Positions 14,860 through 39,423 of a stretch of DNA of 64,000 nucleotides are shown here, piece after piece (position 1 is the first letter of the stretch; every line of letters starts with the position of its first letter). The position numbers and the translations under genes are program-made. The stretch is taken from the IMG/VR virus record IMGVR_UViG_3300044638_006750, positions 1 to 64,000 of that record; one strand, given 5' to 3'. The notes under the pieces are model-generated. The model saw only the letters and a program-made list of their open reading frames with translations, was not told the DNA's origin and searched no databases.

Positions 14860-16345
14860 TATTTATTTTCCTCCACCCATTCTCTATAAGCATCACACGC
14901 TTCTTGTATAATTTGAAAATAGCCTATTACACTAACTCCTTCAAATTCATGTCTCATAATATAATTCTCAAAGAGAAATTCATTTCCCTGTGGTTTGCCC
15001 CAAAGTTGTGTTTTTGTGGGTATGTCGCCCATTGTTTATTCATTTCTTTGATTCTTTGGGGATTTGTTTCCCATTTAGATTAATTAATGCTTTGATTATA
15101 CTTTTTAGTAGGCACAATAGCCCTTAGACGGTTATAGATAATGGTCAAATTAGTACGATCAATATGTACTTTTTCATGGAGAGTATCTCCAATAACCCTT
15201 TTAACCAGAGCAATTTCTTTATCGGTCAACAATACATTCTTATACATAAATCCCCTATTTATTACTACTTTTCCTACTACTAGTTATAGACAGTATACCA
15301 GAAGGGATAGGGTCTGTCAAGAGGGTTTATCGGCCATTCGCACTATTGGCCTTTAATCCAATTTTCACCACGGCGTAAGATAATAAGTGAATTTTAATTT
15401 GATTAGTTAACAAATAGATCATATTAGCTAACAAACCAGTTAAACGACTTATTTCTGGGATTCAGAAGAGGTATATTGGTGGGATTGATAGTGGTGATTA
15501 ATAATATATTCTACAATATATTTGGTAGAAATCATAGAAACTATTGTAACTAGCCCCAAAAGAATCAGGTTTTTGATAAAAGGTTTATGAAATTCTACAA
15601 TTTTTGAACTACTCATCATTTTCATCCTTATAAAGAAAATACTCTAAATACGAAACCAATCCCCACATGATGGTTATGCAGAGAAGAATGATAACATGAC
15701 CATATTTAATTAGGGGATCATTATTGTCCATTAAAATACCTCAAGATCGCCCAGTGTATTCCTATGAGGATTGGTATTGCTATTAGGAATATGATTAGTC
15801 TGGTAGTATCATCATGCACAAATGTTGGACATATTGGCCGTCTAACTATTGTCGGGGTCTGTGCTATTATCTGATGAACTAACATAATTGATTAACCATT
15901 GATTAGCTAGGTATACAATACTCTCTACTATTATAATTCCTAGAATCAAAAAACCAATGGTTCGTAAGATGCTAAATATATTCATATTAACTGACTGTAG
16001 GCATCTGGGGCAAATCCGGTGCTTTAGGTGGGACTACTAAAATCTTCATAAGTTATTTTAGGAATATGATGGTCACCAGCATCCACCATATTTTTGATTT
16101 CTATGGTCAAAATACTACTACTTAAATCTGGAGTTGTTAATCTGTGCTTATTTACCAAGTCTTGAACATGAGCACAAATACTCTCACAGCTAATTTCTTT
16201 GTTTAAAACTATTCCTATAATCATACTAACTGACTGACTGTAACCATAAAAACCGATCCCATAATATTAGGTAGTACAAGCATATCCCCTGATAGATAGG
16301 TGGGTGAGAGAAGAGATACCAGGGGTATGCTTATACGTTATATTA

Positions 16346-16693
16346 TCATCTCCAGCTTCTTACTCTATACCACATTCCGTTACGACCTTGAGCACTAGCA
16401 TCTCCTGTTAGGCTCATATTGTTACCGGGAACACATGTGTTACAATTGGCACTAGAACCATAACCTACCCCTTCAAAACTACCAATAGTTCCCCATACAT
16501 GACCAGTAATATTATTAGCTGCCATATAATTTGCTTCTGCTTGACATCTTTCCTGATCATTTCCCGAAACATAATAGTTACTATAACTTTGGACCTTCAT
16601 GGTCGGCTGACTATAGTACCTGGGCCTCGCCGCCTCCGCGACTAAACTAGTACAAAAAATAACGGCAAATGCAACCATAAAAATTCTCATCAT
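16346..16693 (-). CDS. Small secreted Cys-containing protein
   Basis: Signal-peptide-like N-terminus; GGAGG RBS; FEGVGYG...C..C...GDA. Confidence 0.65.
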   Translation of the reverse strand: MMRIFMVAFAVIFCTSLVAEAARPRYYSQPTMKVQSYSNYYVSGNDQERCQAEANYMAANNITGHVWGTIGSFEGVGYGSSANCNTCVPGNNMSLTGDASAQGRNGMWYRVRSWR

Positions 16694-16818
16694 TTATCCT
16701 CCATGATAAAGTAATTCCTTTTAAGAAAAGACCCCCGAGTTTTTTCGGGGGCGATCTTTTCGTTATGATCTATAATCCGACAAGTTGTCCTAACCCTTCA
16801 GATTATCAACCATGATTT

Positions 16819-17037
16819 TCAACGAACAACATCACGAATACGATTGACTGTTTTTCGTCCTACATTTCGCGTAGCCTGTACGGTGCGTCGTGTTACTGTT
16901 ACTGGAACACTAACAACCTCACGGGTAACATTAACAACACGACTTCGTAGCGAACAAGTGCCGTTGACACATTCACCAGCCATAGAGGTTGAGCCAACAC
17001 AAAGTAGTGCGATTACTAATAGAAAATTCTTCATAAA
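16819..17037 (-). CDS. Small secreted protein, planctomycete-style (GECVNGTC...)
   Basis: AAGGAG RBS before MKNFLLVIALL; signal peptide; CxxGxC then Arg/Val-rich tail. Confidence 0.65.
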   Translation of the reverse strand, partial: FMKNFLLVIALLCVGSTSMAGECVNGTCSLRSRVVNVTREVVSVPVTVTRRTVQATRNVGRKTVNRIRDVVR

Positions 17038-18749
17038 AATAACTCCTTGGTTAAAAAGAATGTGCCGTCCTTGGCACGAATCATTCATTTACTAACCTAT
17101 ACTAGAAAGACGGGATTTGTTGTCAATTCCCAAAATCTTAAAGGGTTCTCTAAACTCGCTGACTACGACCACAAAGACCAAATCCGGCAGATTAGCTGAG
17201 ACTAATTGCCGGACTTGATGTTAACCAAACTTAATGGTAGTTATTACAAACTTTTCTTAGGCTTATACCAAAAATTGTATAGAAAGTATGATGATAGTAA
17301 AGCTAACAATACTAATCCACCAACACTATACCAATAAACTAATGGAAAACTATCGTTCATAAAGCACCTCACTTTAAATTACAAAGAACTCAGTGTCGGG
17401 CTTTTTTGCCTTACTAATTTTGGGACGACTACTACATTTAGTAATCTTGCCCCTATGATCCTTATGTTCAAGTTCTAGGAAACTTTTATCTCTACCGTCG
17501 TTATAATCTTTGAATCTAAAAATATAGTTCTTGATTATATCTTCAGGTTTAGTATCCTGATCATATATTTCCCCTTCTATTTCAAAGGATAATATTCTAT
17601 GAAAGATTCTAGGCATGATGTTCATACTCCTGTGTTAGAGTAGCAGGCCCACTAAAATCTTCCCAATTATCTACTAGAATTTCTGGAGCCTCTTTTCGAA
17701 TCTCTGACTCCAAGGCATAATTAGACTCTTTATCTTTTTCCTTTTGCAGATAGTCTCTTAAACGATCTTTTATCTGCATAAAATCTAATTCACCTAAAAT
17801 CTGATCAATATACTTTCTCTGAATCTCCCTACGAGTAACCTGATTAATAACTCTAGCCTTCATAAATCACCTCATGGTTAAAAAGTTAAAAACAATTCGC
17901 CCATGATTCCAATTGTCCCCCGATTACTCAGGTGACGATCAGCTCCGTTGACAAATCACATTATACCATGGTGGTGAGATATGACAATTTGTTTTTTTAT
18001 TTGATTAGTCTATGTCGTCATAGTTATTGAATCTTCTTGGCGATCTCTTAATAAGAATTCTTTCTGGTTCGGACGGACGCATCATGTCTATAACGATACA
18101 GGATGCTCCTATTAAAAAGAGCAGGAGGACGCCACCAAGAATATAAAAACCGGCCATACAGATACCTCTGGTTGAGCTATAATAGATTTCGAACCCTCAG
18201 ACATGTTTGATTTTGTGTCTTCTTGCTCATGTAGTTTACATAGCGCATATCTCTTTAAAAGTTTCTGAGCTTGACAGTGCTTAGCAAAACTTTATGTATT
18301 ATGCAGAGTTGGTATTAAACTACTAAAGAGTAAGAATACAAGATACATATAACTCTATAGTATCTTATGTATCAATCAGCACTCCATTGCAGACACGAGA
18401 CAGAACAGGATAATGAGCATAAGCATAAGAAGTTCCTTGGGTGACAGGTGTGAAAAAGAAAGTAATATACATTGTAATCACCGGACTTCTACGCAAAACT
18501 ACCAGCATTATCAAGACTCTCATACAAACCATCAATATAATCTCTGTCGCCTTGGCTAAGAGACTTATCATTCCAGTTGACATAACTCAGGGCATCTAGT
18601 ATAATTTCCATATCACGAACGTTGAAACGAAAGCTGTTGTATTCAGGATCGTATGTCATAGCTATCTCCGTAAGATGTTTTGTACTGTCGAGCTACACTA
18701 CCAGTATACCATACCTATCGGTCGCCACAAGGTGTTGAGTATAAAGGAT

Positions 18750-19145
18750 TTAGATCAGAAAACCCCAATGGCACAGGGTCTTAATAGTAGTACCCAAACC
18801 AGGAACCAGTTCTAACTTAAAACAGTCTTTATAAGAAGCCCACACATAGGAGGAATGTTCCCAGTTAAGATCAACCTCATAAAGACCAACTTGATTACAA
18901 ACAAAAACAGTTTTACTATATCCCGAATGATACTTAACTTCCATAGGAGTAAGCTCAAGGGCATTTAGTCTTATATTAGTTTCCTCTCGTAGTTCTCTTA
19001 TAGCAGCATCAATAAGAGTCTCATTATCTTCTACGCCTCCGCCAGGCAAACAATATTTCTCAGGCATCCAAGGAGCAGTTGGTCCTCGTTTCAATAGTAA
19101 TAATTTATTAGCACTTATTACAGCAACCGTACTATTTTTTTGCAT
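18750..19145 (-). CDS. NUDIX hydrolase
   Basis: Nudix box GGGVEDNETLIDAAIRELREETN. Confidence 0.92.
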   Translation of the reverse strand: MQKNSTVAVISANKLLLLKRGPTAPWMPEKYCLPGGGVEDNETLIDAAIRELREETNIRLNALELTPMEVKYHSGYSKTVFVCNQVGLYEVDLNWEHSSYVWASYKDCFKLELVPGLGTTIKTLCHWGFLI

Positions 19146-19751: not shown

Positions 19752-19978
19752 CAAGGTCTTGTGGTTCATGGACTTACGATCATTGGCTGGCTTTACTGGA
19801 CTGACTATGAGCATCATGAGCGAACCCGTTGGATTAGATAGGACAATCTAGGGCTAGAATAACATCCTGACCCTTATTACATTCACTATTATTATTTTTA
19901 CCTAACCCATTGCCACCACTCACCTTACGTCTACTCCATTGTATCGTCATCCCCAACCCCTTGTCTATAGGGAACTTG
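19752..19978. repeat. Extra single 25-bp boxes at the left edge of the element array (19752-19776, 19903-19927, 19954-19978)
   Basis: CAAGG-N15-ACTTA, TAACC-N15-CCTTA, CAACC-N15-ACTTG; same 5-15-5 geometry. Confidence 0.65.
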
Positions 19979-20002
19979 CGAGATTCTTTTACAAAATTTA
20001 CG

Positions 20003-20080
20003 TAAGTCATTGCCACCATTAAACTTACGACTAAATTCGCGGGCCGGGATCTCCCTAAGTCCTTTAGTGGCAACCACTTA
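20003..20080. repeat. 78-bp double-box element, copy 1
   Basis: TAAGT-N15-ACTTA-N28-TAAGT-N15-ACTTA. Confidence 0.9.
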
Positions 20081-20098
20081 CGTCAAATCCACCATCAT

Positions 20099-20141
20099 AA
20101 AAAAGGAGAAGCCGCCCCCCACCCCTGAGGGACGGCTTCCC
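20099..20141 (-). terminator. Rho-independent terminator after the DUF932-like gene
   Basis: Minus strand GGAAGCCGTCCCTCA-GGGG-TGGGGGGCGGCTTCT stem, then CCTTTTTT. Confidence 0.8.
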
Positions 20142-20168
20142 CGAGCCACGCACCACGAAAGGAGAGCG

Positions 20169-21119
20169 TTAGATGGCGTTGGCGAACTGCAATGCAGTGT
20201 CCAATGCCTTGGAGTTGTCGTTCGCATTCTGGCCGAACCAGAGCGAGTCGAGCCGGTTGTCCGACGTGCGACCCTTGCTGTAGTTCAGGTATTCGTTGAA
20301 ACCGTTGTAGGCAGCCCACCACGTTCCACGAACCCCAACCGCAGCCTGCTTCGGACCTTCGACGAGAGTAAGGATCTCGTCCATGATATTGCGGGTGCGA
20401 GTCTTGATCTCCTCGTCCGCAGTACCTTCGATGCCCAGCAGTACCTTGACATACCGACGAACGTCGGCCTGATTGAAGTTCTTCGACGCGAGGAACCGAT
20501 ACTGTTCAGCAGTCGCTTCGAACTCCGCATTGATGTTGTCCATAATGTCACGGACTTGTTCCAGATTGGTCTTGCTGGAGCGGGTGTGACGAATACGGAT
20601 CAGTTTGCTGCCGCTATGCTTGCTGTGAGCAGCGGCGAGCGTGTTGACGCACACAACCCGGATCGGCGTATAGCCGACACGAATGGCGGTTGTGCCGTCG
20701 TGACTGTTCGACAGCAAAATGAACTTGCAAACCTCGTCACCCTTGACGATTTCGCTATTGTCACGGTTGAGTTGGGCAAGCACCCAAACCTTCTGGCCGC
20801 TATGCAGCGAACCGGCAGTGTGCAACTGGCACTCGCCAGCGTCAAGAAACGGCTGGAACCAATCGAACGCATCGCTGTTTTGCAGCGGAGTGTATCGCGG
20901 ACCAACAACCCCCAGAATAGAGTTATCAGTCTTGCGGTACGTTGCACGGGCGGGAACGGGCGTCCCCTCTTGGGTAAACAGGTCTTTCAGACCAACTTCC
21001 CAATCCAGACCAGCGGCGGTAATCGCCTCCGAAACAGTGGGAGCCTCATCCAACTGGTTCCCCAGACCGTGCCACGGGGTCGCACCAACAAACATCATCT
21101 TTTCAACAGCAGCAGGCAT
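20169..21119 (-). CDS. DUF932/DUF945 phage-plasmid protein (TIGR03299-like)
   Basis: PWHGLG, AGLDWEV, LGVVGPRYTPLQN, LLSNSHDG, TPIRVVCVNTL, GTWWAAYNG. Confidence 0.9.
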   Translation of the reverse strand: MPAAVEKMMFVGATPWHGLGNQLDEAPTVSEAITAAGLDWEVGLKDLFTQEGTPVPARATYRKTDNSILGVVGPRYTPLQNSDAFDWFQPFLDAGECQLHTAGSLHSGQKVWVLAQLNRDNSEIVKGDEVCKFILLSNSHDGTTAIRVGYTPIRVVCVNTLAAAHSKHSGSKLIRIRHTRSSKTNLEQVRDIMDNINAEFEATAEQYRFLASKNFNQADVRRYVKVLLGIEGTADEEIKTRTRNIMDEILTLVEGPKQAAVGVRGTWWAAYNGFNEYLNYSKGRTSDNRLDSLWFGQNANDNSKALDTALQFANAI

Positions 21120-21161
21120 ATCTATCCCTTTCGTGTTACTGAACCTTCGTTACGTCCTTCG

Positions 21162-21202
21162 ATTCTACCATCTATTATCGGCATTGTCAAGGGGGTGTCT
21201 TG
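21162..21202 (-). promoter_or_regulatory. sigma70 promoter with nested sigma28-like motif (type example)
   Basis: Minus strand TCAAG-acacccc-c-TTGACA-at-GCCGATAA-tagatgg-TAGAAT; 17-bp -35/-10 spacer. Confidence 0.85.
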
Positions 21203-21222
21203 AGAAAATTTTGTGATTGTCG

Positions 21223-21300
21223 TAAGTCGTTGTGGCGTAAGCACTTACGTTCAGCCGGGGCGCCCCGCCTGATCCTAAGTCCTTGGCGGACTTGGATTTA
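21223..21300. repeat. 78-bp element, copy 2
   Basis: TAAGT-N15-ACTTA-N28-TAAGT-N15-ATTTA. Confidence 0.9.
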
Positions 21301-21781
21301 GGAATGGGGTCTTGTAGCGTTGTTGAAACATTTTGGCTGTTTCTGTAGTGTACGCACATTCATCTGGAATATAGCAATACAATCCATTACATATTGCTTT
21401 GGGATTATCTTCGTATATAGCTTGACGAATCCATTTGAAAGTATCCCCAGAACAAATAAGATCATCTACTACAATATATCTAAAAGGAGAAACTCCTTCA
21501 ATATAAAAATCGCTGTATCGTTTTTCGTCTGGCTTACGAATAACTACAATATTTTTATTTAGCAGTTCTGCTATCTGAGGAACCACCATCAGTCCGCTTA
21601 CACCACAGCAAGCAATACTATCAAATGTATTAGCGATTGGTCGCAAATCACAAACTGCTTTGATAATAATCTTATTCCGGTTCTTGTGGTTCAAAACTCG
21701 ACACGTATGACTAGCACCCTGAATAATCTTGCCATCATCAGTGCGACGAACATCTTCTATAGATTGATTCATAAGATTCAT
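21275..21781 (-). CDS. Type I phosphoribosyltransferase-like protein
   Basis: CGVSG; VIRK; IVVDDLICSGDT PRPP motif. Confidence 0.8.
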   Translation of the reverse strand: MNLMNQSIEDVRRTDDGKIIQGASHTCRVLNHKNRNKIIIKAVCDLRPIANTFDSIACCGVSGLMVVPQIAELLNKNIVVIRKPDEKRYSDFYIEGVSPFRYIVVDDLICSGDTFKWIRQAIYEDNPKAICNGLYCYIPDECAYTTETAKMFQQRYKTPFLNPSPPRT

Positions 21782-21784
21782 AAA

Positions 21785-21864
21785 AACGGATGGTACGATT
21801 CGAACGTACTAGAAAGAAAGGAATAAAGAGATGATAATAACTTGTCCCACCAAGTTGCATCCGT
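21785..21864 (-). ncRNA. tRNA-like RNA with the anticodon arm replaced by a CU-rich single strand
   Basis: Acceptor ACGGATG/CATCCGT; D-like arm ACTTG-GTGGGA-CAAGT; T arm GTACG-TTCGAAT-CGTAC. Confidence 0.7.
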
Positions 21865-21875
21865 CCGAGAGAAGA

Positions 21876-22097
21876 TCAATCGTCAAGTTCGTCAATGTCA
21901 GAGTAGTAACTCTGGAACTCTGTATTGTATGGTTGACTCTCGTCATCATCAGCGTCAGTCATCCATGCTTCATCGGTTCCATCGTCATAGTAGATTTCAT
22001 CTTCAATATAATCAGCATCTTCGGCTAGATTGTGGTAATCGTATTCGTAATCATTCTCTCTCATAATCAACTCTCCTTTGATACCATCATACACCAA
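21876..22097 (-). CDS. Small, very acidic protein
   Basis: D/E/Y-rich; AAGGAGAG RBS before the internal Met (MRENDY). Confidence 0.65.
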   Translation of the reverse strand: MVYDGIKGELIMRENDYEYDYHNLAEDADYIEDEIYYDDGTDEAWMTDADDDESQPYNTEFQSYYSDIDELDD

Positions 22098-22115
22098 TCA
22101 GCCGCTTTTGTCAAG

Positions 22116-22188
22116 TGGGCCTTCTGGGACTCGAACCCAGAACCAATAGATTAAAAGTCTACTGCGCTGCCAATTGCGCCAAAGGCCC
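22116..22188 (-). tRNA. tRNA-Lys(UUU)
   Basis: Cloverleaf GGGCCTT...AAGGCCC-A; anticodon loop CT-TTT-AA. Confidence 0.92.
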
Positions 22189-22225
22189 GTTTAAACATTA
22201 TATCTTATGATTTGTTTTTGTCAAG

Positions 22226-22297
22226 TGACCCCACGGAGAATCGAACTCCGATCTTCGGGATGAAAGCCCGATATACGAACCATTATACTATGGGGCC
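22226..22297 (-). tRNA. tRNA-Glu(UUC)
   Basis: TCGGG-CT-TTC-AT-CCCGA; T loop TTCGATT. Confidence 0.9.
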
Positions 22298-22336
22298 AGC
22301 CTCGCAACTCAACGTCAGCCTCCGAAGCATTAGAAG

Positions 22337-22412
22337 TAGGGCGTGTACGAGTCGAACGTACCTATGACGACCTTATAAGAGTCGCGGATGCTACCGGCTT
22401 ACCTTACGCCCC
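22337..22412 (-). tRNA. tRNA-Ile(UAU)
   Basis: CGACT-CT-TAT-AA-GGTCG; acceptor GGGGCGT/ACGCCCT-A. Confidence 0.8.
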
Positions 22413-22462
22413 GTGTTTTGTATTCTACTCTGTATATCGACCTTTGTCAAGGGAAACTTTAG

Positions 22463-22549
22463 CGGAATCTGAGGGATTCGAACCCCCGGAGGATTTTAAC
22501 CCTCGGCGGTTTAGTAAACCGCTGCCTTAAACCACTCGGCCAAGATTCC
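22463..22549 (-). tRNA. tRNA-Ser(ACU), long variable arm
   Basis: GCGGT-TT-ACT-AA-ACCGC; variable arm GAGGGTTAAAATCCTC; G73. Confidence 0.85.
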
Positions 22550-22551
22550 AA

Positions 22552-22623
22552 CTGGCGAGACAGGATTCGAACCTGTAACCTAGCGGTTAACAGCCGCTTG
22601 CACTACCGTTGTGCTACTCGCCA
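22552..22623 (-). tRNA. tRNA-Asn(GUU)
   Basis: AGCGG-CT-GTT-AA-CCGCT; G73. Confidence 0.92.
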
Positions 22624-22627
22624 ATAA

Positions 22628-22698
22628 TTCCGGGACTACGATTTGAACGTAGAATAAAGGATCCAAAGTCCTCTGTGATACCGTTTCACCATCCCGGA
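22628..22698 (-). tRNA. tRNA-Gln(UUG)
   Basis: GAGGA-CT-TTG-GA-TCCTT; U1-A72. Confidence 0.9.
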
Positions 22699-22699
22699 G

Positions 22700-22771
22700 A
22701 GCCGACGAAAGGATTTGAACCTTCAACCTATTGATTACAAATCAATTGCACTACCGTTGTGCTACATCGGC
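22700..22771 (-). tRNA. tRNA-Thr(UGU)
   Basis: ATTGA-TT-TGT-AA-TCAAT; GCCGATG/CGTCGGC acceptor. Confidence 0.9.
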
Positions 22772-31221: not shown

Positions 31222-31629
31222 CTAGAACATCATCGCGGCCAAACCGCTCTTGAACAAAGCACCAGCCAGCAAAGGTCTACGACAGTTGGTAGTACGCTCT
31301 GCGTAGAAGTTACGAACACTGCCATTCGGCATCTTGCAAGTAACAAGATGACTGGTACGCACAAACTGCGGATCATTACGACGATACGCACTACGGGTAT
31401 TCAGTCTTCGGATACTTGCACTGTCCAGAGTATGAACATCCAGAACCTTAGCAAGATAACGCTCAGGATCGCCCTTTGCGGGCTGTTCATAAACAAAGTT
31501 ATACACTTCGCCAACCTTTGCTGTACTCAGTGATCCATGCACACCACCGTACACAGAATACGTCAGGAATGCAATCACAGCAGTAGCAACAACAACAATA
31601 CCACCAATCACAAACGTCAAATCGCTCAT
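31222..31629 (-). CDS. Membrane-anchored hypothetical protein
   Basis: N-terminal TM helix; GAAAGGG RBS; own promoter. Confidence 0.7.
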   Translation of the reverse strand: MSDLTFVIGGIVVVATAVIAFLTYSVYGGVHGSLSTAKVGEVYNFVYEQPAKGDPERYLAKVLDVHTLDSASIRRLNTRSAYRRNDPQFVRTSHLVTCKMPNGSVRNFYAERTTNCRRPLLAGALFKSGLAAMMF

Positions 31630-31763
31630 ATCAACCCTTTCGTTAGAAAAACTAGAACCACAACTCCAACCATTCTACATCTATTATCGTCATTTGTCAA
31701 GCGGAAACTTTAGAAATCTATCCCGTTCAGTTGCGTAAGGCTTGTCCTCTTGTTCTATATCTA

Positions 31764-32324
31764 TTATCGACCAACAGTACCTACCTTCTTTAGAGAATTT
31801 GGGTAGAACTTGAAAAAATCTCGAATGTCGTCGTTGTATGCCATATTGGCATTATCACAAGTCGCATCAAAATAGAGATAATACCCGCTATCTTGTCGAG
31901 TCAGATTTTGCGTATACTTCTTGACATGCTTTTGCTCACTCCATTTTGTCACTAGTCCATTAGGAGTAATAAAAATCATGAACAAAATATCGAAACATTC
32001 AGGCTTGACACCACTGAAAACGCAAATGCTCTTGGAGCCTTTCTTGGTGTGTTTGGGAAACATCTTAGCAGTCTTGACTTCGCAACGAATGTTGTCGTTC
32101 AAAAGAATGTCAAAAGATTTCGTACCACCATGCCTCTTGACATCATATCCGTTTTGACGCAGCCGACGAGCCATCAGTTTCTCGCCGCATTGACCAATAG
32201 CATACGGGTCAAGACGAGAAAGAGTATACGCTAACTTGTTCAGTTTGGGGCAAAAATAGGTTTCCGGCTCCAAACACTTGATTCCGTTCTTGATCTTATG
32301 AAAGTCACGCATCGTGAACATCAT
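31764..32324 (-). CDS. PD-(D/E)xK nuclease-like protein
   Basis: GEKLM...FDILL...CEVKTA. Confidence 0.65.
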   Translation of the reverse strand: MMFTMRDFHKIKNGIKCLEPETYFCPKLNKLAYTLSRLDPYAIGQCGEKLMARRLRQNGYDVKRHGGTKSFDILLNDNIRCEVKTAKMFPKHTKKGSKSICVFSGVKPECFDILFMIFITPNGLVTKWSEQKHVKKYTQNLTRQDSGYYLYFDATCDNANMAYNDDIRDFFKFYPNSLKKVGTVGR

Positions 32325-32403
32325 TATTCTCCTGTAGTTATGGCTATTCTACAAGAGTATCGGCTATTGTCAATAGATTTAGTGAAAAAATTATTTTTTG
32401 TTC

Positions 32404-32481
32404 TAAACCTATGGCAGATAAGAACTTACGACAAATCGGGCCGCTCCGCCTCACCCTAAGTGCTTTAGGGATAAGGCTTTG
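32404..32481. repeat. 78-bp element, copy 9
   Basis: TAAAC-N15-ACTTA-N28-TAAGT-N15-CTTTG. Confidence 0.9.
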
Positions 32482-32985
32482 CGTTCACTCAAAATCCACA
32501 AAAATAACCTGATTATATCCACGAGGCTTGATGGTTAGGCTCTCACCATAGTCATAGGTGTCAGCCTTTACGTTTGTCATACCAACAGCTTTCTTCGCGT
32601 AATATGTAATAGTACGCTGTGAGGCTTCATTGGGTAGATCAAATCCATATCGGTTAACCCAACCATAATTAGCTTCACCACCCAGCGTATCAGTAATTAT
32701 CACATTCACCTTCATCTCCAAACTCCTTATGTTCAAATACAAGATCGCTCATCAAATAGGATACCAGAATCCCAGCAGCCATACCCAAACCGAAAATCAC
32801 ATAACCATCCATGGCTCTTTTCCTTTTAGTTTATAAGATAGGTTGCCACACAACCGCCCAAAAAACTCGCCAGAAACAAGATTTTCTCACTGAAACTCAT
32901 GCTTGCACCATTCTACTTTAGAAAGATTATTCTGTCAAGTGCTGACTACAAGCCATTGTAGCCGAATCCGAAGGATTAGCAGAGA

Positions 32986-33156
32986 CTACCAGCCATCTCC
33001 TATTGCCTTTCGATTGTTCGCCCCGCGAGTCCGAAGACGCTTGGGACGGTTATCGTGCTTACCACTACCTCCAAGGTGGGGGTTGTGACCTTTGCCTATT
33101 TCCCATACTTGACGCACGTTCAATACCAACACCATGTTTTTCTTGCGTTTGCTCAT
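32986..33156 (-). CDS. 56-aa basic protein (absent from ORF track)
   Basis: MSKRKKNMVLVLNVRQVWEIGKGHNPHLGGSGKHDNRPKRLRTRGANNRKAIGDGW; directly behind a promoter. Confidence 0.65.
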   Translation of the reverse strand: MSKRKKNMVLVLNVRQVWEIGKGHNPHLGGSGKHDNRPKRLRTRGANNRKAIGDGW

Positions 33157-33218
33157 GTTCTTTACTCTACCATATTATCGACCAAAGTCAAGCACAACCT
33201 GTAAGAATTTTTTTGTCA

Positions 33219-33296
33219 TAAGTCATTGGCAGCAAAAGACTTAGAACTAATCCGAGCGGCCCCGCTTGCCACAAGTGCTGTAGCAGCAAGGGTTTA
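33219..33296. repeat. 78-bp element, copy 10
   Basis: TAAGT-N15-ACTTA-N28-CAAGT-N15-GTTTA. Confidence 0.88.
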
Positions 33297-33545
33297 CGAT
33301 CAGAAATCTCCAACAGTATTCAAGCGTACAGGCTCGCTCTTGAATGAACATACATTCAGTCCACTAGCAGCCACAACAGTATCGAACATGATACCGAGAA
33401 ACTCCTGCCTTTCAACTGCTGTACTCATATCATGTTCTGGCAACTCTAACAGAAACTCACGATCAACGGCAATCTCATCACCATTATCATTCTCTACGAG
33501 AATATCATAGAAGCGATGCGTGTTCATACTGTGCTCTCCTTGGGT

Positions 33546-33866
33546 TCAATCGTAGTAGGGGCCATCTTCGTTGTAATCAACATAACCGATTGCATCATCG
33601 GCATGGAAATCCTCTCGGTCATCTCCGTAGTAGCCGTAATCCTCATCTGTTCCCCAACCGCATGACGCAAGGCCGGACTCGTGATCTCCGTCCATATCAT
33701 CATTAATATCCTCATCAACCCAGTCCACCTCTCCACTATTATCATCCTCGTCGTAAAAGTCGTTGTAATCGTCATAGTTAGAATCTTCTTCGTCGCCAAC
33801 GTAGGCCATGTCATCGTCCTCATAAGCGTTATCGGGATCGAACAGGGGGTCAGGGTGACTCATCAT
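33546..33866 (-). CDS. Extremely acidic protein (DGDHESGLASCGWGTDEDYG)
   Basis: D/E-dominated; AG-rich RBS; own promoter. Confidence 0.75.
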   Translation of the reverse strand: MMSHPDPLFDPDNAYEDDDMAYVGDEEDSNYDDYNDFYDEDDNSGEVDWVDEDINDDMDGDHESGLASCGWGTDEDYGYYGDDREDFHADDAIGYVDYNEDGPYYD

Positions 33867-34170
33867 CTTCCTCTCTTTCTTGTATCGGCAGTCTACCAGA
33901 AAAACTTTAGGCTGTCAAGCCCTACCAGCCGTTTCGGCGATATTCTTCTCGGAGTTCCTCTTCTTCACGACGCTGACGATCATTCACAGGAGGGCCATAT
34001 CCCAGATCATATGCTTCTCGCGCAGCATCATATCCATCATCAGAATCTTCGTCATTCCATTGGTCGTATCGACTCATCTTTCACTCTCACTTTCTCTACT
34101 TCTTATATCGTCAAGTCTAGCATCTCAACTTTAGCCTGTCAAGAGAAAATCTAAAAATTTTTTGTTGACG

Positions 34171-34248
34171 TAAACTGTTGAGACATAAGGACTTACGTTT
34201 CGCGGGGCCGGCCGGCCTCACCGCAAGTGCTTATGCGGCAAGGCTTTG
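34171..34248. repeat. 78-bp element, copy 11
   Basis: TAAAC-N15-ACTTA-N28-CAAGT-N15-CTTTG. Confidence 0.88.
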
Positions 34249-34915
34249 CGTCAAACCGTAAACTCTACGTCCGGTTCGATCTGGTCACTAATCCCCACCA
34301 CCTCAGCCCAATCGTAAAAATCGACTTGGACACTAGGATCATCAATCGGCTCAACCATCGGCTCAAGAATACCCTGCTCTGCCATCTCGTCAAGGATCCG
34401 GTTTACTGCGTCGAAATCCAGCATACTGTTTTCCTTTGGGGTGGTGAGAACAAAAGCCATCATATGCGGAAAGTGTGTCATTGTCAAGCCCTTATTTCAT
34501 GAGTCTAAGAACAGCCTCCAACCTCGCAATTTCCAGCCTCAATTCAGCCACCTTGCCGAACATCCTAGCCTGTCGATAATTGTCGATATCGTATCGCAGG
34601 CTTATGATCTGATAGTTGATGGTTTCGCGTGTCATGGTCTTCCTTTCTCTAATCTAGTCTACACTCGGCCGTCCTACTTGTCAATACGCTTCTCAAAAAT
34701 TGTGTCCAAATAAATCTCTTTTTCACTGACCACCCATCCATACTCACAACGAGGGGTATACACACCAATATAGACTTTCCCTTTTTCGACTCCCTCAAAT
34801 CCCAGACCATAACCGAACAACCCAGCCAGAAATATCATAGAGAACATAAAAGGTTCCTTTCTATGTATATTATCGGCTAATTCCCGCTAACATCTTTAGC
34901 ACAAATAATTTCACC

Positions 34916-34993
34916 TAAATCCCTATCCTGCAACAACTTACGACCAGCCGGGGCGCGCCCCTGCATCGTAAGTCTTTACGTCGCAAGGGTTTG
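34916..34993. repeat. 78-bp element, copy 12
   Basis: TAAAT-N15-ACTTA-N28-TAAGT-N15-GTTTG. Confidence 0.88.
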
Positions 34994-35091
34994 CGTCAAT
35001 TTTTGTTATTGTAGAACGGACTGATTACACAATAGGCAAAACCGACATATCCGATGATGAACATTAAGGCACTGAACATTTTATAGTCTTT

Positions 35092-35928
35092 CTATTTACA
35101 GGGTTGCAGATCGTATAGGGAACAGTGGACAGTCCTACCGTCATCATACTGTACTGATGCCCAAGCATCTTTTGTACCATAAATCTCATCGGCCAAGACA
35201 CCCATGAAACATTTCACCACAACCTTTTGACCGTCCAGCATCACAGTATCCCCGTATCGAGGGGTGTGTTCAGCAGTAAACATTTTTAGTTTTCGTCCTT
35301 CCATGCAAATGGGCTGATTTCTTCGCCATATGCCGTAATGGCTTCGTACTGAGCCTTCAACGCTTCCACACGCTCTTTGCTGCCCGGCTTGCCAACCTTC
35401 ACGATCATGGTATCGTCTCCACCAATAAGCCGAGGATCGGCCTTCTCGACACGAATTTTGCCGAGCCGACGCAGTGCTTTCCGATTGAACTTCAAAACCT
35501 TTTCAGAAACCACATACCGCTTCTGGTCTGCAACTCCGTAAACGTAGTCGGTATCTTCGGTGATTCGATCATCGGGAATCTCTACCAGCATGGGAATCGC
35601 GATACCCTTGAAAACCATACGGGCCTGACGCTTGGCGTTCTCAATAATGGCAAACTTCGTTTTCATCTTTGTCTCTCTTTCTTGTGTGTGGATTCTAGCA
35701 ACCTGTCTACCGCTTGTCAAGCCCTCAAATCTTCCAGTGGGAGAACTTCAGGGTGAACACTTGTCCAGGGTACTTGCTTGCGATGTACGCTTCGGCGGTT
35801 TCCTTCCGATTGTCGGTAGCCGAAACACCCTGAACCACCTTACCGTCGATGATGACGCTCCAGATTCGACGCTTGCGAATCTTCGGCAGGGAAGCGATGA
35901 AACTGTTGACGCTAGTGACCTTTTCCAT
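35092..35928 (-). CDS. Hypothetical early ORFs (35725-35928, 35286 to about 35666, 35092 to about 35284)
   Basis: AG-rich leaders (AGAAAGAGAGA...ATG). Confidence 0.7.
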
Positions 35929-36052
35929 CTTTTCTCTCTCTTTCTTTCTCTTATATCGACATTATACCATGGATTCTTGAGGTTGCAAGAGAAATCTAGA
36001 AATTTTTGTGTCAAGATTTTTTGACAAAACTTTTGCCTGCTTTTTGAGCATT

Positions 36053-36068
36053 TGGCATACTATTTGCT
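36053..36068 (+). promoter_or_regulatory. sigma54-type -24/-12 motif
   Basis: TGGCATACTATTTGCT (GG-N10-GC). Confidence 0.55.
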
Positions 36069-36077
36069 AGTGCGTCA

Positions 36078-36155
36078 TAAGTTCTTGTGGCTTAAGCACT
36101 TACGTCAAAATTTGCCCGCCCTCCTCGTTGTAAGTCTATATGCGGCAAGCAGTTA
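36078..36155. repeat. 78-bp element, copy 13
   Basis: TAAGT-N15-ACTTA-N28-TAAGT-N15-AGTTA. Confidence 0.9.
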
Positions 36156-36912
36156 CGATTAGTTTTCGCGTCCTACATACCAAGTTTTCCCACTATCGTC
36201 TTTCATTTTTTTCCACCCCATTTTCGCAAAATACCTATCTTGAAGATAGTTGTCAACAAGCCTAAATGTTTGCAAGAAAATCCACCAACCAACCGTAGAG
36301 CCAACAAACCAAGCCCCAATAAACCATATTGCCAAGGTTGCCCACATCTCCACCTCTGCTTCACTCATGTTTCCCCTTTCGGTTTAGGATACGCCCATCC
36401 AAGAAGCGTTTTCACAACAATAATCGTAGAACATATCGTTCAGAACTTCTTCATAGTTCTTATCTTTCAAGAGCCTACGGTCAAGGGTTGAGTCACACTC
36501 AGCATAAAACTTACCCTTTCCTACTTCAAACACAATCGTACAGGCATGAGCCTCACTACCCCAAATCCTAGCCTTAGCATCCACAAACTTCTTCAACATC
36601 TTTTTCTCTCTTTCTTAGTACGATTCTAGTAGATGGTTTCAATGTTGTCAAGCCCCACAAGCCACTTCCCACTCATGGGGCATATAGCCTTTTTGCAGTT
36701 CGGTTGTGCTGCACTCGCATTGCACACCGGCCAGATCGACCACCCATACATCACCCTCGTCGAAGTACCAATCAACAATCTTTCCAGTGATTCCACCAAG
36801 CCGAACCTTGTCACCAATCTCGTACATTCTAGCCTTTCTTTCTTGTTGCCTGTATTCTATACATCTATTATCGACTTGTCAACAGTGAAAACTGAAGAAA
36901 TTTTTTTAGACT

Positions 36913-36990
36913 TAAAGTGTTGGTGTGTAAGTAGTTACGTCAAATCGGAGCGGCCGGCCTCGCCGTAAGTTCTTTACGGACAAGGCTTTA
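36913..36990. repeat. 78-bp element, copy 14
   Basis: TAAAG-N15-AGTTA-N28-TAAGT-N15-CTTTA. Confidence 0.88.
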
Positions 36991-36992
36991 TG

Positions 36993-37292
36993 TCAACCCA
37001 CAACCATACGGTCTTCAAACGGTGTACCATCGTTCAGGTACCACTCATAGTTCTTCTGGTATACCTGTACGGGTGAATACTGGTTGATACGCTTCTTCGT
37101 GGTGTGTGTACGCCATCCACCACTATTCAGCATCACAGTATCATCGGGATAGATTACTACAACATTCGTACCGTGCAACTCGATTGCAACGCTACCATCT
37201 GCTTGAATGTAGGCATAGGTGTTGTTGCCAACCTTTCGTTGTCCACGATTACGCTTACCCAAAACCATCTTCGTTGCTTCTGCGTGTGTCAT
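36993..37292 (-). CDS. Phage hypothetical protein (LHG...LNSGGWRT.TTK.RIN family)
   Basis: Motif recalled from phage early proteins (unverified); stop abuts the element. Confidence 0.7.
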   Translation of the reverse strand: MTHAEATKMVLGKRNRGQRKVGNNTYAYIQADGSVAIELHGTNVVVIYPDDTVMLNSGGWRTHTTKKRINQYSPVQVYQKNYEWYLNDGTPFEDRMVVG

Positions 37293-37703
37293 TTTTTCTT
37301 TCAGTTAAAAAGGTTTTCCAGCCATTCACGATACATCTCGCCCATCGCACAAAAAACTTCATGCAGAATATAGGTGAGTCCTGCACATGCACACAGTAGA
37401 GCCAAATCCACAAAAGTCATTTCTTTTTCCTCTTTGGAGAGTCTAGTATATCGTCTCTCGCTGGTCCTGTCAATACTCTCCACAATCTTCGACAACTTCT
37501 TCTCCAATCACTTCGCAGTGTTCGCAGCACTTCGGGCAAATACCATAATCCACTTGGGCGAAGGTCATCTCACAGCCGCAGCAATCCGAAGTGAAGTAGA
37601 CCCGAATGACGTTTTCCATGGTTTTCCTTTCCTCTTGTGTTGTGTCTATTATACTTATCGGCATATTCCTGTCAATACCTTAAAAAGATTTTTATACAAG
37701 CCA

Positions 37704-37781
37704 TAAGTGGTTGTCAGATAAGCACTTACGTCAAACGCGGCGCGCCCCGCTTTTCGTAAGTCTTTATGGGCTAAGGTTTTA
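37704..37781. repeat. 78-bp element, copy 15
   Basis: TAAGT-N15-ACTTA-N28-TAAGT-N15-TTTTA. Confidence 0.9.
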
Positions 37782-38371
37782 CGTTATAGAGCGGATGCTC
37801 TCCCGATACCTGAACCGCAGTTCAGTAGCAGCAGCCCGAATCACCTCGCATAGCACCTCTTTTAGAGCACCCTTCGCATGGGGGAGTTGAAGCTGTGCCT
37901 CACGCAGAGTCAACTGAATCGTGCTGGTTTGCATAGTGTCGAATGATGGCTGAAAATAGCTGGTATTCATCTGTTCTCTCTTTCTGTGGTTGTATCCTAC
38001 CGTATCCACGCTTGGCTGTCAAGTCGTGTAGGCATTGGTAAGCCGATGATACTTAGCCCACAACTCATCTACCACGAACTGCACAACCCGATCATGAGAA
38101 CCACGGCAAACGTAGTATCCCATGTGAATGTCGAACAGGGCATACGTCCCATCCGTTTGGGGGTGGAACGTGAAGCCACACTTGTAGGCGTAGGCGTTGA
38201 TCTTACCCTTGATCGTCGAAGTCTTAGGAGGCTTTCTCATTTTCTTCTCTCTCTTTCTCTCTTACTTCTTATATCGACATTATACCAGCCCCTACTTGAG
38301 TTTGCAAGAGAAAAATCTAGATTTTTATGTCAAGAAATTTTGACAAAATTTTTCTGTATTTTGAGTATGTT

Positions 38372-38387
38372 TGGCACACCAATTGCT
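38372..38387 (+). promoter_or_regulatory. sigma54-type -24/-12 motif
   Basis: TGGCACACCAATTGCT (GG-N10-GC), near consensus. Confidence 0.6.
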
Positions 38388-38396
38388 ATATCGTCA

Positions 38397-38474
38397 TAAC
38401 CCTATATCTCATAAGTACTTACGTCGAATCCGAGCCGCCCCGCTAGTCGTAAGTCTTTATCAGATCACCACTTA
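38397..38474. repeat. 78-bp element, copy 16
   Basis: TAACC-N15-ACTTA-N28-TAAGT-N15-ACTTA. Confidence 0.9.
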
Positions 38475-38476
38475 GG

Positions 38477-38578
38477 TCACATGTGGTCATTATAGATTAT
38501 TTCGATCTGCCTAAACACATAGAACAACAGCATAGTGATGGTGGAAGCAAAACACAGGTCGATAATCAGCCTAATCAT
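38477..38578 (-). CDS. 33-aa membrane peptide (absent from ORF track)
   Basis: AAGGAG RBS; MIRLIIDLCFASTITMLLFYVFRQIEIIYNDHM; stop abuts the element. Confidence 0.6.
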   Translation of the reverse strand: MIRLIIDLCFASTITMLLFYVFRQIEIIYNDHM

Positions 38579-38630
38579 GAGCAACTCCTTTTTCGGTATT
38601 CTACACTATGGATTCTGAACAATCAAGCCC

Positions 38631-39391
38631 TTAGCAAGCGTAGATAAAAACTTTTTCATTCACACAACGATTACTAATCGTCACAATCCAATTCTTTCCG
38701 CTTCCGTCTTCTCTCATGATGCTATTCACCAGCCCGCAGTGAGCGTTGCCCTTGGGGTCGATCACACCAATATACTTACCAGCAGTCATAGCAGCGAAAA
38801 TCTTGCTCAGGTTGTTGTTGTGCTTGGTCATGTTCTTTTCTCCTTAGTGATTGTATTCTATAAGATTATTCTAGGCTGTCAATACTGTACGCTTGTTTAG
38901 AGAATCGTACCATCACCACGAATACGATACATGATACCGCCGATACTGTACAGAACAATACCCTCTCCGAGATGCTGAACAAACGTAGCCGAGTAGCCGT
39001 GTCGAGCAACCAACCGTCGAACCGTATTTTGCACTTGAATCGTCATTTTATTTCTCTCTTTCTTATACGTATATTCTATCAAGATTTTTTAGCGTGTCAA
39101 TACTGATCAGTAGTACAGTCCGTCAGCAACCACCTCACCGTTCTCATTCACCTCGATAAACTCTCCCTCATCGCCCATCGGGAAAAAATACTGAATATAT
39201 CCGTACTCGTCGTTCAGAGCCTCTTCGAGCAACTCGCCACCGATGCGAGCAATCCCAACCAAGGTATCGGGAGAAGTGCTATCCGCACCGTACAGGAACT
39301 CAACCAACTCGTCTCGGGTGTTCAAGGTAACCATTTTTATCATCTCCTCTTGTGTTGAACGTATTATACATATCGGCTTTTCTCGTGTCAA
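38631..39391 (-). CDS. Three small ORFs, each behind its own sigma70-like promoter (39107-, 38897-, 38631-)
   Basis: TTGACA and TAGAAT/TATAAT at about 39363-39391, 39073-39100 and 38855-38882. Confidence 0.7.
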
Positions 39392-39423
39392 TACCTTAGA
39401 AAAAAATTTTTCTGTAATTATCC

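What the first reader, a model, noticed from the sequence alone, without database searches (positions are those of the whole stretch)
15326..39400. Nested dual promoters: sigma70 plus a sigma28/FliA-like motif
Seen: many early promoters (TTGACA-17-TAGAAT) carry GCCGATAA or GNCGATAW inside the spacer and TAAAG/TCAAG/TAAGG upstream at a near-constant distance (first four bases, N16-17, then GNCGATA). Examples near 21175, 22435, 23216, 25280, 26208, 27400, 31076, 31684, 37656 and 39370. At about 15326, 31764, 33882 and 34870 the motif occurs with no TTGACA inside it, so it appears independently conserved. Known: the sigma28 consensus is TAAA-N15-GCCGATAA; spacing here is 1-2 bp longer. Inference: early genes can be fired by the housekeeping sigma or by a flagellar/developmental sigma, which would suit both swimmer and sessile stages of a dimorphic Planctomycete. 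A phage-encoded factor is an alternative reader.
Basis: partly seen in the sequence, partly recalled or inferred. Interest (0 to 1): 0.72.

Follow-up and report, generated by a model that had tools for sequence, protein, structure and literature searches.

The report
Sigma-28-like second promoter class in phage
An uncultured, very abundant freshwater jumbo phage carries, beside its ordinary housekeeping-type early promoters, about twenty copies of a second two-part promoter signal that matches the bacterial flagellar sigma-28 consensus except for a spacer 1-2 bp longer; which protein reads it is still open.

Summary
The window is the first 64 kb of a 232.7-kb lake-water jumbo phage. T[AC]A[AG]G-N15/16-GNCGATA occurs 18 times on the minus (early) strand, against 0.09 expected. 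The gap is sharply fixed. The motif is conserved, on one strand only, in related phage genomes.

It is an independent element, not a spacer quirk. Its internal spacing holds while its position relative to the TTGACA/TAGAAT promoters takes four registers, and 28 of 104 pooled sites have no sigma70-like partner. In orthologous promoters both halves are kept while the spacer sequence drifts.

Both halves, and their tolerated variants, match E. coli FliA sites, but the gap is N15/16, not N14.

The reader of the motif is unresolved:
- ORF 44381 goes with a different, family-wide late motif, GTGTAT.
- A second phage sigma at 165 kb has a sigma70/RpoS-like -35 helix.
- Both sigmas also occur in relatives that almost lack the motif.

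I favour a host FliA-type sigma (about 0.4) over an unrecognised phage factor (about 0.33). The Planctomycete and dimorphic-host story has no support. No RNA data exist.

The parts
39370..39398 (-). Bipartite site TAAGG-N16-GCCGATAT. The -10-like half abuts the TATAAT of a TTGACA promoter (register B).
38271..38299 (-). TCAAG-N16-GTCGATAT. The upstream half lies inside the spacer of TTGCAA..TATAAT, and the -10-like half lies just after TATAAT (register C).
37655..37682 (-). TAAGG-N15-GCCGATAA, register B.
35953..35980 (-). TCAAG-N15-GTCGATAT, register C. The orthologous promoter in relative G001 is register A.
34870..34898 (-). Stand-alone TAAAG-N16-GCCGATAA, 22 nt upstream of the ATG at 34847. 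No sigma70-like pair.
34105..34133 (-). TAAAG-N16-GACGATAT, register C (inside and after TTGACA..TAGACT).
33882..33909 (-). TAAAG-N15-GCCGATAC, register C.
31764..31792 (-). Stand-alone TAAAG-N16-GTCGATAA, 80 nt upstream of the next dual promoter.
31684..31712 (-). TAAAG-N16-GACGATAA nested in TTGACA-N17-TAGAAT (register A).
31076..31104 (-). TAAGG-N16-GCCGATAA, register A.
27400..27428 (-). TAAAG-N16-GCCGATAA, register A (TTGACT..TATACT).
26208..26235 (-). TCAAG-N15-GCCGATAA, register A.
25280..25308 (-). TAAAG-N16-GCCGATAA, register A. The promoter is conserved in four relatives.
23216..23244 (-). Stand-alone TCAAG-N16-GCCGATAA, exactly 7 nt before the ATG at 23208. The same 7-nt gap is found in three relatives, so a leaderless mRNA is predicted.
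22434..22461 (-). TAAAG-N15-GTCGATAT, register A, upstream of tRNA-Ile.
21175..21203 (-). TCAAG-N16-GCCGATAA, register A, upstream of the 316-aa ORF starting at 21119.
15327..15355 (-). TAAAG-N16-GCCGATAA with a TTGACA..TATACT promoter starting 6 bp after the octamer (register D). Conserved in G002.
10656..10683 (-).
19938..39391 (-). Field of near-consensus sigma70-type early promoters. They have TTGACA-N16-18-TAGAAT/TATAAT, often TGn-extended, with A/T-rich upstream tracts. The region has about 44% G+C, against about 34% elsewhere.
44381..45013 (+). Phage sigma no. 1, 210 aa. It has Sigma70 region 2, four invariant cysteines and a C-terminal helical part. It heads the plus-strand structural module and has its own TTGACA-N17-TATTAT promoter near 44187-44215.
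49567..49573 (+). GGTGTAT, the candidate late/middle promoter core. It lies directly after the terminase stop codon and 57 nt before the portal ATG.
54940..54946 (+). GGTGTAT after a terminator hairpin, upstream of the gene starting at 54998. Conserved in relatives.

Best explanation
The motif is a second promoter class of the sigma28 (FliA/WhiG) type. Its consensus is (c)T[A/C]AAG(ttt)-N15/16-G[C/T/A]CGATA[A/T]. These promoters are laid over, or placed beside, the sigma70-type promoters of the phage's early region.

Each site would recruit RNA polymerase carrying a sigma28-like factor and start transcription about 8 nt after the -10-like octamer. In nested sites that is about 12 nt upstream of the sigma70 start. 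In the other registers it is 6-9 nt away. At stand-alone sites it is the only start, and in one case it falls on the A of the ATG, giving a leaderless mRNA.

I think the most likely reader is a FliA-type sigma of the unknown host whose preferred spacer is 1-2 bp longer than the textbook value. Early genes could then be fired by either host holoenzyme.

Shown: the motif is real, has fixed spacing, is strand-specific, lies upstream of genes, is independent of the sigma70 register, is conserved in relatives, and resembles FliA sites. Inferred: that it is a promoter, and who reads it.
For: Statistics and spacing:
- Searches give the counts against shuffles and the sharp gap histogram.
- Pooled early regions of six genomes hold 104 sense sites at N15/16. 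Any other gap has 3 or fewer, and the antisense strand has 1 or fewer.
- Five relatives carry 11-19 sites each, all on one strand. The reversed-pattern control gives 0-2.

Independence from the sigma70 promoters:
- The -35 start relative to the G of GNCGATA is -7..-10 in 53 sites, -13/-14 in 8, -28..-30 in 9, +8/+14 in 6, and absent in 28.
- Orthologous promoters keep both halves and the gap length while the spacer sequence changes. They also switch register between genomes.

Consensus without circularity:
- Anchoring only on TMAAG-N17/18-CGA gives G 82%, not-G, C, G, A, T 90%, A 77%, A/T.

Promoter-like position:
- Most own-genome sites lie 7-55 nt upstream of a start codon, and a few lie further.
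- The stand-alone site at 23216 has a 7-nt gap to the ATG in four genomes. This fits P. aeruginosa fliC, where GCCGATAA spans -15 to -8 (PMC12784957).

Resemblance to known sigma28 sites:
- The published consensus is TAAAGTTT-N11-GCCGATAA (PMC7286023).
- E. coli FliA ChIP-seq sites use the same variants: TAAAG/TCAAG/TAAGG and GCC/GAC/GTC-GATAA (PMC4203485).

Against the recognisable phage sigmas as readers:
- The sigma no. 1 family and the GTGTAT motif persist in relatives without the bipartite motif.
- Sigma no. 2 has an invariant TREAVRQ helix. This resembles RpoS TRERVRQ, not FliA ESRVSQ.
- The complete genomes G220 and G222 carry sigma no. 2, and G220 also sigma no. 1, at the same divergence as motif-rich genomes. 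Yet they have 0-1 sites.

Against a sigma70 -10 reading:
- The base that would be the -7 T is T in only 42% of sites.
Against: - The gap (TAAAG-N15/16, with N16 twice as common) is longer than every documented sigma28 consensus. The canonical gap is N14, and Chlamydia uses N14/15.
- A survey of 201 Verrucomicrobiota genomes also peaked at N14. This rests on a hand tally of the first 70 listed matches.
- The host is unknown, so it cannot be shown to have fliA.
- No transcript data exist.
- Dependence of stand-alone promoters on a conditionally active host sigma is unusual for a lytic programme.
- I know of no precedent (own knowledge).
- Phages commonly place their own middle promoters among early ones.
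Confidence: 0.4

Rival explanations
1. The motif is a phage 'middle' promoter class read by a phage-encoded factor. That factor could be one of the two recognisable sigmas with an unexpected specificity. More likely it is an unrecognised sigma-like or sigma-appropriating protein encoded in the extra early module of the motif-rich clade. The likeness to sigma28 sites would then reflect descent or convergence.
For: - Placing a second promoter class among early promoters on the same strand is the classic T4 and SPO1 layout (own knowledge).
- The non-canonical spacer suggests a non-canonical reader.
- The phage encodes two sigma-family proteins.
- Sigma no. 2 has a strong region 4, and WhiG/FliA models are among its better C-terminal hits.
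- Sigma no. 2 is absent from the motif-less relative G006.
- Motif-rich genomes are about 50 kb larger than the motif-poor G220 and G222, and carry a G+C-richer early module.
Against: - Sigma no. 1 and sigma no. 2 occur, at the same level of divergence, in complete genomes that almost lack the motif.
- The -35 helix of sigma no. 2 is of the sigma70/RpoS type.
- Sigma no. 1 goes with GTGTAT.
- No further sigma-like ORF was found with the region 2, region 4, region 4_2 or FliA/WhiG models. The only extra hit was a small HTH protein that G220 also has.
- An unrelated factor would have to copy sigma28 specificity, including its tolerated variants.
Confidence: 0.33
2. The two conserved words are an operator or activator site for a DNA-binding regulator that modulates the sigma70 promoters. 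They are not a promoter.
For: - About 70% of sites overlap a sigma70-type promoter. A protein bound there would occlude or assist RNA polymerase.
- A conserved small HTH protein is encoded downstream of one such promoter at 205.3-205.6 kb.
Against: - The element is asymmetric. Its two halves are unlike each other, so it is neither a dyad nor a direct repeat.
- It is strictly co-oriented with transcription.
- It takes four different registers relative to the sigma70 hexamers. No single occlusion or activation geometry fits this.
- 28 of 104 sites have no sigma70-like promoter to regulate, yet these lie just upstream of start codons.
- The sequence equals a known sigma consensus.
Confidence: 0.1
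3. The motif has no function of its own. The words hitch-hike in a promoter cassette that was copied many times within the early region.
For: Many register-A promoters share further words, such as tttcc(t)c before TTGACA and ATAGATG before TAGAAT. This would be expected of copies.
Against: - Spacer sequences differ between sites and between orthologues, while the two halves and their distance are kept.
- The motif moves relative to TTGACA, and it occurs without it.
- It is kept across genomes whose proteins are only 46-63% identical.
Confidence: 0.04

Closest known systems
Sigma28 (FliA / SigD / WhiG) promoters of late flagellar and chemotaxis genes, consensus TAAAGTTT-N11-GCCGATAA
   Same: - Both halves match, including flanks: P. 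aeruginosa has TCTAAAG, the phage has cTAAAGttt.
- The CGA core is invariant.
- The tolerated variants are the same: TCAAG and TAAGG, and GAC/GTC-GATA.
- The position corresponding to a sigma70 -7 T is not conserved.
- Sites lie just upstream of genes.
   Different: - The gap between TAAAG and G is 15-16 bp instead of 14.
- The carrier is a phage early region, not a flagellar regulon.
- Most copies overlap a sigma70-type promoter.
- Reading by sigma28 has not been tested.
Chlamydia sigma28 promoters (TAAAGWWY-N11/12-RYCGAWRN)
   Same: They show that sigma28-type promoters can use a gap one base longer, and that A or T is tolerated at the second -10 position.
   Different: The phage optimum is a further base longer (N16 about twice as common as N15). 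Position 1 is G in 82% of sites.
Overlapping early and middle promoters of T4 (MotA/AsiA) and the SPO1 sigma cascade (gp28, gp33/34)
   Same: A second promoter class sits among host-type early promoters on the same strand. Phage-encoded sigma genes are present (own knowledge).
   Different: - The motif is not a MotA box plus a sigma70 -10. The would-be -7 T is T in only 42% of sites.
- Neither recognisable phage sigma tracks the motif.
T4 gp55-type late promoters (one short -10-like element read by a small phage sigma)
   Same: The GTGTAT[A/T] element upstream of the portal and other non-early genes is a short single element. It co-occurs with the small sigma ORF 44381 across the family.
   Different: The sequence is different (T4: TATAAATA, own knowledge). 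This is a separate promoter class from the finding. The link to ORF 44381 rests on co-occurrence only.

Membership tests
Sigma28/FliA-dependent promoter | -35 element TAAAG(TTT) | tested here: met
   The upstream half is TAAAG in 55 sites, TCAAG in 45 and TAAGG in 4, out of 113 relaxed sites. It is preceded by C and often followed by TTT. The same variants occur in E. coli FliA sites.
Sigma28/FliA-dependent promoter | -10 element GCCGATAA with a CGA core | tested here: met
   Anchoring only on TMAAG-N17/18-CGA gives G 82%, C/T/A, C, G, A, T 90%, A 77%, A/T 68%.
Sigma28/FliA-dependent promoter | Fixed spacer of 11 bp between the two octamers, equal to TAAAG-N14-G | tested here: not met
   The gap is N15 (32 sites) or N16 (72 sites), and N14 is essentially absent. 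Published sites have N14, and Chlamydia N14/15. Verrucomicrobiota peak at N14.
Sigma28/FliA-dependent promoter | Co-oriented with, and shortly upstream of, the transcribed gene | tested here: met
   23 of 24 genome hits lie on the gene strand. Most are 7-55 nt from a start codon.
Sigma28/FliA-dependent promoter | Transcription starts about 8 nt after the -10 octamer and depends on the sigma28 holoenzyme | not testable with these tools
The host is unknown.
Sigma70-type (housekeeping) promoter | TTGACA-N17+/-1-TATAAT-like hexamers upstream of genes | tested here: met
   14 exact TTGACA-N16-18-TAGAAT (0.05 expected). The genome has 28 with TANAAT, 25 of them on the minus strand.
T4-type middle promoter (activator box plus sigma70 -10) | A sigma70 -10 hexamer with a conserved -7 T as the downstream half | tested here: not met
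   If GATAAT were the hexamer, its last T is T in only 62 of 146 sites.
Sigma-70 family sigma factor (ORF 44381) | Region 2 and region 4 domains | tested here: inconclusive
   Sigma70_r2 scores 25.5 bits against a cut-off of 24. No region 4 hit was found. The AF2 model (pLDDT 72) gives only weak whole-length Foldseek matches to sigma factors, with E of 0.02 or more.
FliA/WhiG subfamily (phage sigma no. 2, genome 165192-165782, minus strand) | Score above the family cut-off, and a FliA-type -35 recognition helix (ESRVSQ; P. aeruginosa S224 and Q228) | tested here: not met
   TIGR02479 scores 21.9 bits against a cut-off of 189.6. The helix is TREAVRQ in all family members aligned, matching RpoS TRERVRQ. 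It does pass the general sigma-70 model TIGR02937 (47.5 against 42.9).

The most novel reading that the evidence does not exclude
A globally abundant clade of aquatic jumbo phages has wired about 20 early promoters per genome to its host's flagellar/developmental sigma factor (FliA/WhiG type) as well as to the housekeeping sigma. Infection would then start equally well in motile (sigma28-active) cells. The host lineage would use a sigma28 promoter geometry, with a +2 bp spacer, that has not been described.
Probability: 0.3. Interest if true: 0.8.

Novelty: new variant of a known kind. Interest (0 to 1): 0.6.

Why it matters
If a host sigma28-type factor reads these sites, this would be, as far as I know, the first phage whose early programme is systematically dual-wired to a host alternative sigma. 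It would tie infection to the host's motility or developmental state. It would also reveal a sigma28 promoter geometry outside the textbook one.

If a phage factor reads them, there is an unrecognised sigma or sigma-appropriation system that copies sigma28 specificity.

Either way the phage group is extremely common in lakes: its putative capsid protein has more than 5,400 distinct relatives. It now has three separable promoter classes (TTGACA/TAGAAT, TAAAG/GNCGATA and GTGTAT). That gives a ready map for reading its temporal programme from metatranscriptomes.

Tried and rejected
- Host identification failed. Megablast against cultured phages found nothing. The terminase and Pol III alpha give only distant hits of 24-34% to Bacillus and other phages. 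The nearest GlmS relatives are scattered over phyla. Two MAG labels on sigma no. 2 homologues (Caulobacteraceae, Paceibacterota) are probably binning noise. The 'moraphage' paper (PMC12619734) describes a different, Bacteroidota-linked lineage.
Verrucomicrobiota served as the only PVC proxy.
- RNA evidence is absent.
- Complex prediction with both sigmas and a stand-alone promoter was not folded. It is not evidence either way.
- A GCCGATAG word upstream of sigma no. 2 is not conserved in relatives, so autoregulation was dropped.
- A conserved TTGACA..TAAAAT about 300 nt upstream of sigma no. 2 lies in a conserved coding stretch (LTEAWVLGKI). It cannot be counted as a promoter.
- The small HTH protein at 205.3-205.6 kb was considered as a clade-specific reader. 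The motif-poor G220 also has it.
- Searching contigs from the look-up of encoding contigs as whole records is not possible.

Full report
**What the window is.** The window is bases 1-64000 of a 232,683-bp IMG/VR virus record rated complete. It was assembled from lake-water metagenomes.
- Genes run on the minus strand from about 44 kb down to 1, and on round the record end from 232 kb down to 130 kb. A short plus-strand block at 185-192 kb interrupts this.
- Genes run on the plus strand from 44 to 130 kb. This module holds terminase, portal, a putative capsid protein and a 4,284-aa ORF.
- G+C is about 34%, but about 44% between 20 and 40 kb.
- No cultured phage is close.
- The clade is very common. 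There are 385 IMG/VR contigs with a related terminase and more than 5,400 distinct relatives of the putative capsid protein.

All elements lie on the minus strand.
- TTGACA-N16-18-TAGAAT occurs 14 times exactly (0.05 expected). GCCGATAA occurs 11 times (1.5 expected).
- T[AC]A[AG]G-N15/16-GNCGATA occurs 18 times on the minus strand and once on the plus strand. Block-wise dinucleotide shuffles give 0.09 per strand.
- The whole genome has 24 hits, 23 of them on the minus strand. The gap histogram is sharp: N15 = 9, N16 = 15, and 3 or fewer for every other gap from 8 to 25.

**The motif is an independent element.** I pooled 375 kb of early regions from this genome and five relatives of 190-238 kb. 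Their terminases are about 80% identical to ours and their sigma no. 1 proteins 59-63%.
- There are 104 sense-strand sites at N15/16. Any other gap has 3 or fewer, and the antisense strand has 1 or fewer.
- Each relative carries 11-19 sites, all on one strand. A reversed-pattern control gives 0-2.
- The motif keeps its internal distance while its register to the sigma70-like hexamers changes:
  - A, just after TTGACA inside the spacer: 53 sites.
  - B, abutting the -10 hexamer: 8 sites.
  - C, TAAAG inside the spacer and GNCGATA just after the -10 hexamer: 9 sites.
  - D, upstream of a TTGACA: 6 sites.
  - No sigma70-like pair at all: 28 sites. A few of these are register C with a weaker TTGCAA -35.
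- Orthologous promoters keep both halves and the gap length while the spacer sequence drifts. Upstream of the ORF at 23208, four genomes read T[A/C]AAG-16 unrelated bases-G[C/T]CGATAA.
- Orthologous genes carry the motif in different registers in different genomes.
- This rules out simple cassette copying. It also makes a single operator geometry hard to fit.

**The consensus.** I anchored only on TMAAG-N17/18-CGA, so the other positions were free.
- This gives 146 sites, against 23-41 at wrong gaps.
- The -10-like half reads G (82%), not-G (C 40%, T 28%, A 28%), C, G, A, T (90%), A (77%), A/T (68%).
- The upstream half is TAAAG (55), TCAAG (45) or TAAGG (4). It is usually preceded by C and often followed by TTT.

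**Promoter-like position.**
- Most of the genome's 23 minus-strand sites lie 7-55 nt before a start codon; a few lie further. One precedes tRNA-Ile.
- At 23216 exactly 7 nt separate GYCGATAA from the ATG, in this genome and in three relatives.
- In the P. aeruginosa fliC open complex, GCCGATAA spans -15 to -8 (PMC12784957). The same geometry would put +1 on the A of the ATG here, giving a leaderless mRNA.
- By the same rule the second start lies about 12 nt upstream of the sigma70 start in register A. It lies about 6 nt upstream in B and about 9 nt downstream in C (inference from the sequences).

**Comparison with sigma28.**
- The published consensus is TAAAGTTT-N11-GCCGATAA (PMC7286023). P. 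aeruginosa has TCTAAAG at -36 to -30.
- The ChIP-seq-defined E. coli FliA sites use the same variants as the phage: TAAAG, TCAAG and TAAGG, and GCCGATAA, GACGATAA (fliC) and GTCGATAA (PMC4203485).
- The position that would be a sigma70 -7 T is T in only 42% of phage sites. This argues against a sigma70 -10. It fits sigma28, which reads -11A but does not flip -7.
- The one clear difference is the gap: N14 in E. coli and Pseudomonas, N14/15 in Chlamydia (PMC8762339), and N15/16 here.
- A survey of 201 Verrucomicrobiota genomes peaked at N14. By hand tally of the first 70 listed matches, N14 = 16, N15 = 4 and N16 = 3. This is approximate.

**Who reads it: the phage sigmas.** The phage encodes two sigma-family proteins.

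Sigma no. 1 is ORF 44381 (210 aa).
- It has a Sigma70 region 2 hit only, four invariant cysteines and a helical C-terminus. Its model gives weak whole-length fold matches to sigma factors.
- It heads the structural module and has its own TTGACA-N17-TATTAT promoter.
- Its family is large and viral, with 1,353 clusters.

A third promoter class goes with sigma no. 1.
- GGTGTAT/GTGTAT is the most enriched word in non-early intergenic regions.
- 24 of 26 GGTGTAT copies in the genome point the same way as the genes.
- All 52 distinct portal upstream regions among relatives carry GTGTA[TA] 42-73 nt before the start. Random windows do so in 3.5% of cases.
- Distant relatives keep sigma no. 1, the synteny and a GTGTAT upstream of late genes (L173, and L175/L176 = G006). 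They have no bipartite motif in the 10-kb early flank, or in 130 kb of G006.
- So sigma no. 1 goes with GTGTAT, not with the finding.

Sigma no. 2 lies at genome 165192-165782 on the minus strand (196 aa), outside the window.
- It has a strong region 4 (45.7 bits) and passes the general sigma-70 model. WhiG, RpoD and FliA models hit its C-terminal half weakly.
- Its recognition helix is TREAVRQ in all eight family members aligned. RpoS has TRERVRQ. E. coli FliA has ESRVSQ, and the S and Q residues of that helix contact the -35 element in P. aeruginosa.
- This predicts a TTGACA-like -35, not TAAAG.

Co-occurrence of the sigmas and the motif:

| Genome | Size / completeness | Sigma no. 1 | Sigma no. 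2 | Bipartite hits | Consensus TTGACA promoters |
|---|---|---|---|---|---|
| G220 | 178 kb, complete | 60% identical | 51% identical | 0 | 7 |
| G222 | 161 kb, complete | not tested | 54% identical | 1 | 3 |
| G001-G005 | 192-238 kb | 59-63% identical | 46-50% identical | 11-19 each | not counted |
| G009, G225 | 153 kb; 126 kb | not tested | present | 15 and 17 | 16 each |
| G000 (this phage) | 233 kb | own | own | 24 | 28 |

- Neither recognisable phage sigma tracks the motif.
- No other sigma-like ORF was found. The only further hit is a 94-aa HTH protein at 205.3-205.6 kb, and G220 also has it.

**Weighing the readings.**
- The motif copies sigma28 specificity in detail. It lives only where host-type sigma70 promoters live, and it is uncoupled from the phage sigmas. 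This favours a host FliA-type sigma.
- Against that stand the spacer, the unknown host, the lack of any transcript data and the lack of precedent (own knowledge).
- A clade-specific, unrecognised phage factor therefore remains a serious rival.
- I put the host sigma at about 0.4, a phage factor at about 0.33, a regulator site at about 0.1 and no function at about 0.04.

**What is not supported.**
- The phage tRNAs all decode A/U-ending codons. This is compatible with a host richer in G+C than the phage, but it says no more than that.

**What could not be done.**
- RNA reads were not available.
- The protein-DNA complex job was not folded.
- Planctomycete genomes could not be reached.

Noticed in passing
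window 25735-25797 (minus strand): A Pistol self-cleaving ribozyme (RF02679) scores 53.7 bits against a gathering score of 34.5. It lies in the early region between tRNA-Arg and the next ORFs.
   Followed up: no
genome 165192-165782, minus strand (L136:15192-15782), outside the window: A second phage sigma-70-family protein of 196 aa. It has a strong region 4, and its -35 helix is TREAVRQ, as in RpoS and sigma70. It is conserved in most large relatives.
   Followed up: yes
window 49567-49573 and 54940-54946 (plus strand); also 58019, 110158, 153140, 157655, 160284 in the genome: A third promoter-like class, GGTGTAT[A/T], often followed 5-7 nt later by TATAC. It lies upstream of non-early genes. 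All 52 distinct portal upstream regions of relatives carry it.
   Followed up: yes
window about 21200-21300 and other early intergenic regions (minus strand): Conserved words such as ACGTAAGT..CTTACG, GACTTAGG and GACTTACGACAA, plus G+C-rich palindromes, lie 40-90 nt upstream of the -35 hexamers. They are enriched about fivefold in early intergenic DNA and are kept in relatives. They are probably terminator or processing hairpins.
   Followed up: partly
window 38240-38270, 35928-35952, 34077-34104 and others (minus strand): Long GA-only leaders of the AAGAAAGAGAGA type lie directly before many early start codons.
   Followed up: no
window 20000-40000: The promoter-dense early module has about 44% G+C, against about 34% for the rest of the genome. 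The regions fetched from complete relatives of 161-178 kb (G220, G222) show no such G+C-rich stretch, few consensus promoters and almost no bipartite motif.
   Followed up: partly
window 22115-22771, 25463-25534, 29011-29085 (minus strand): There are nine tRNA genes. All identified anticodons read A/U-ending codons, and they include tRNA-Ile(TAT). The gene at 29011 has an irregular anticodon loop ('gaga') according to ARAGORN.
   Followed up: no
window 64020 onward (plus strand), to genome 76874: A 4,284-aa ORF follows the head genes. It is probably a very long tape-measure protein.
   Followed up: no
genome 165783-165832 and the equivalent place in about 20 relatives: A conserved word tAGGACTtt lies 20-35 nt upstream of the start of sigma no. 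2 in most relatives. Its meaning is unknown.
   Followed up: no
window 39620-43832 (minus strand) and 45799-46824 (plus strand): Host-like metabolic and surface genes flank the sigma gene: a subtilase, GlmS (glutamine-fructose-6-phosphate aminotransferase) and a GDP-mannose 4,6-dehydratase. The dehydratase position is kept in distant relatives.
   Followed up: no
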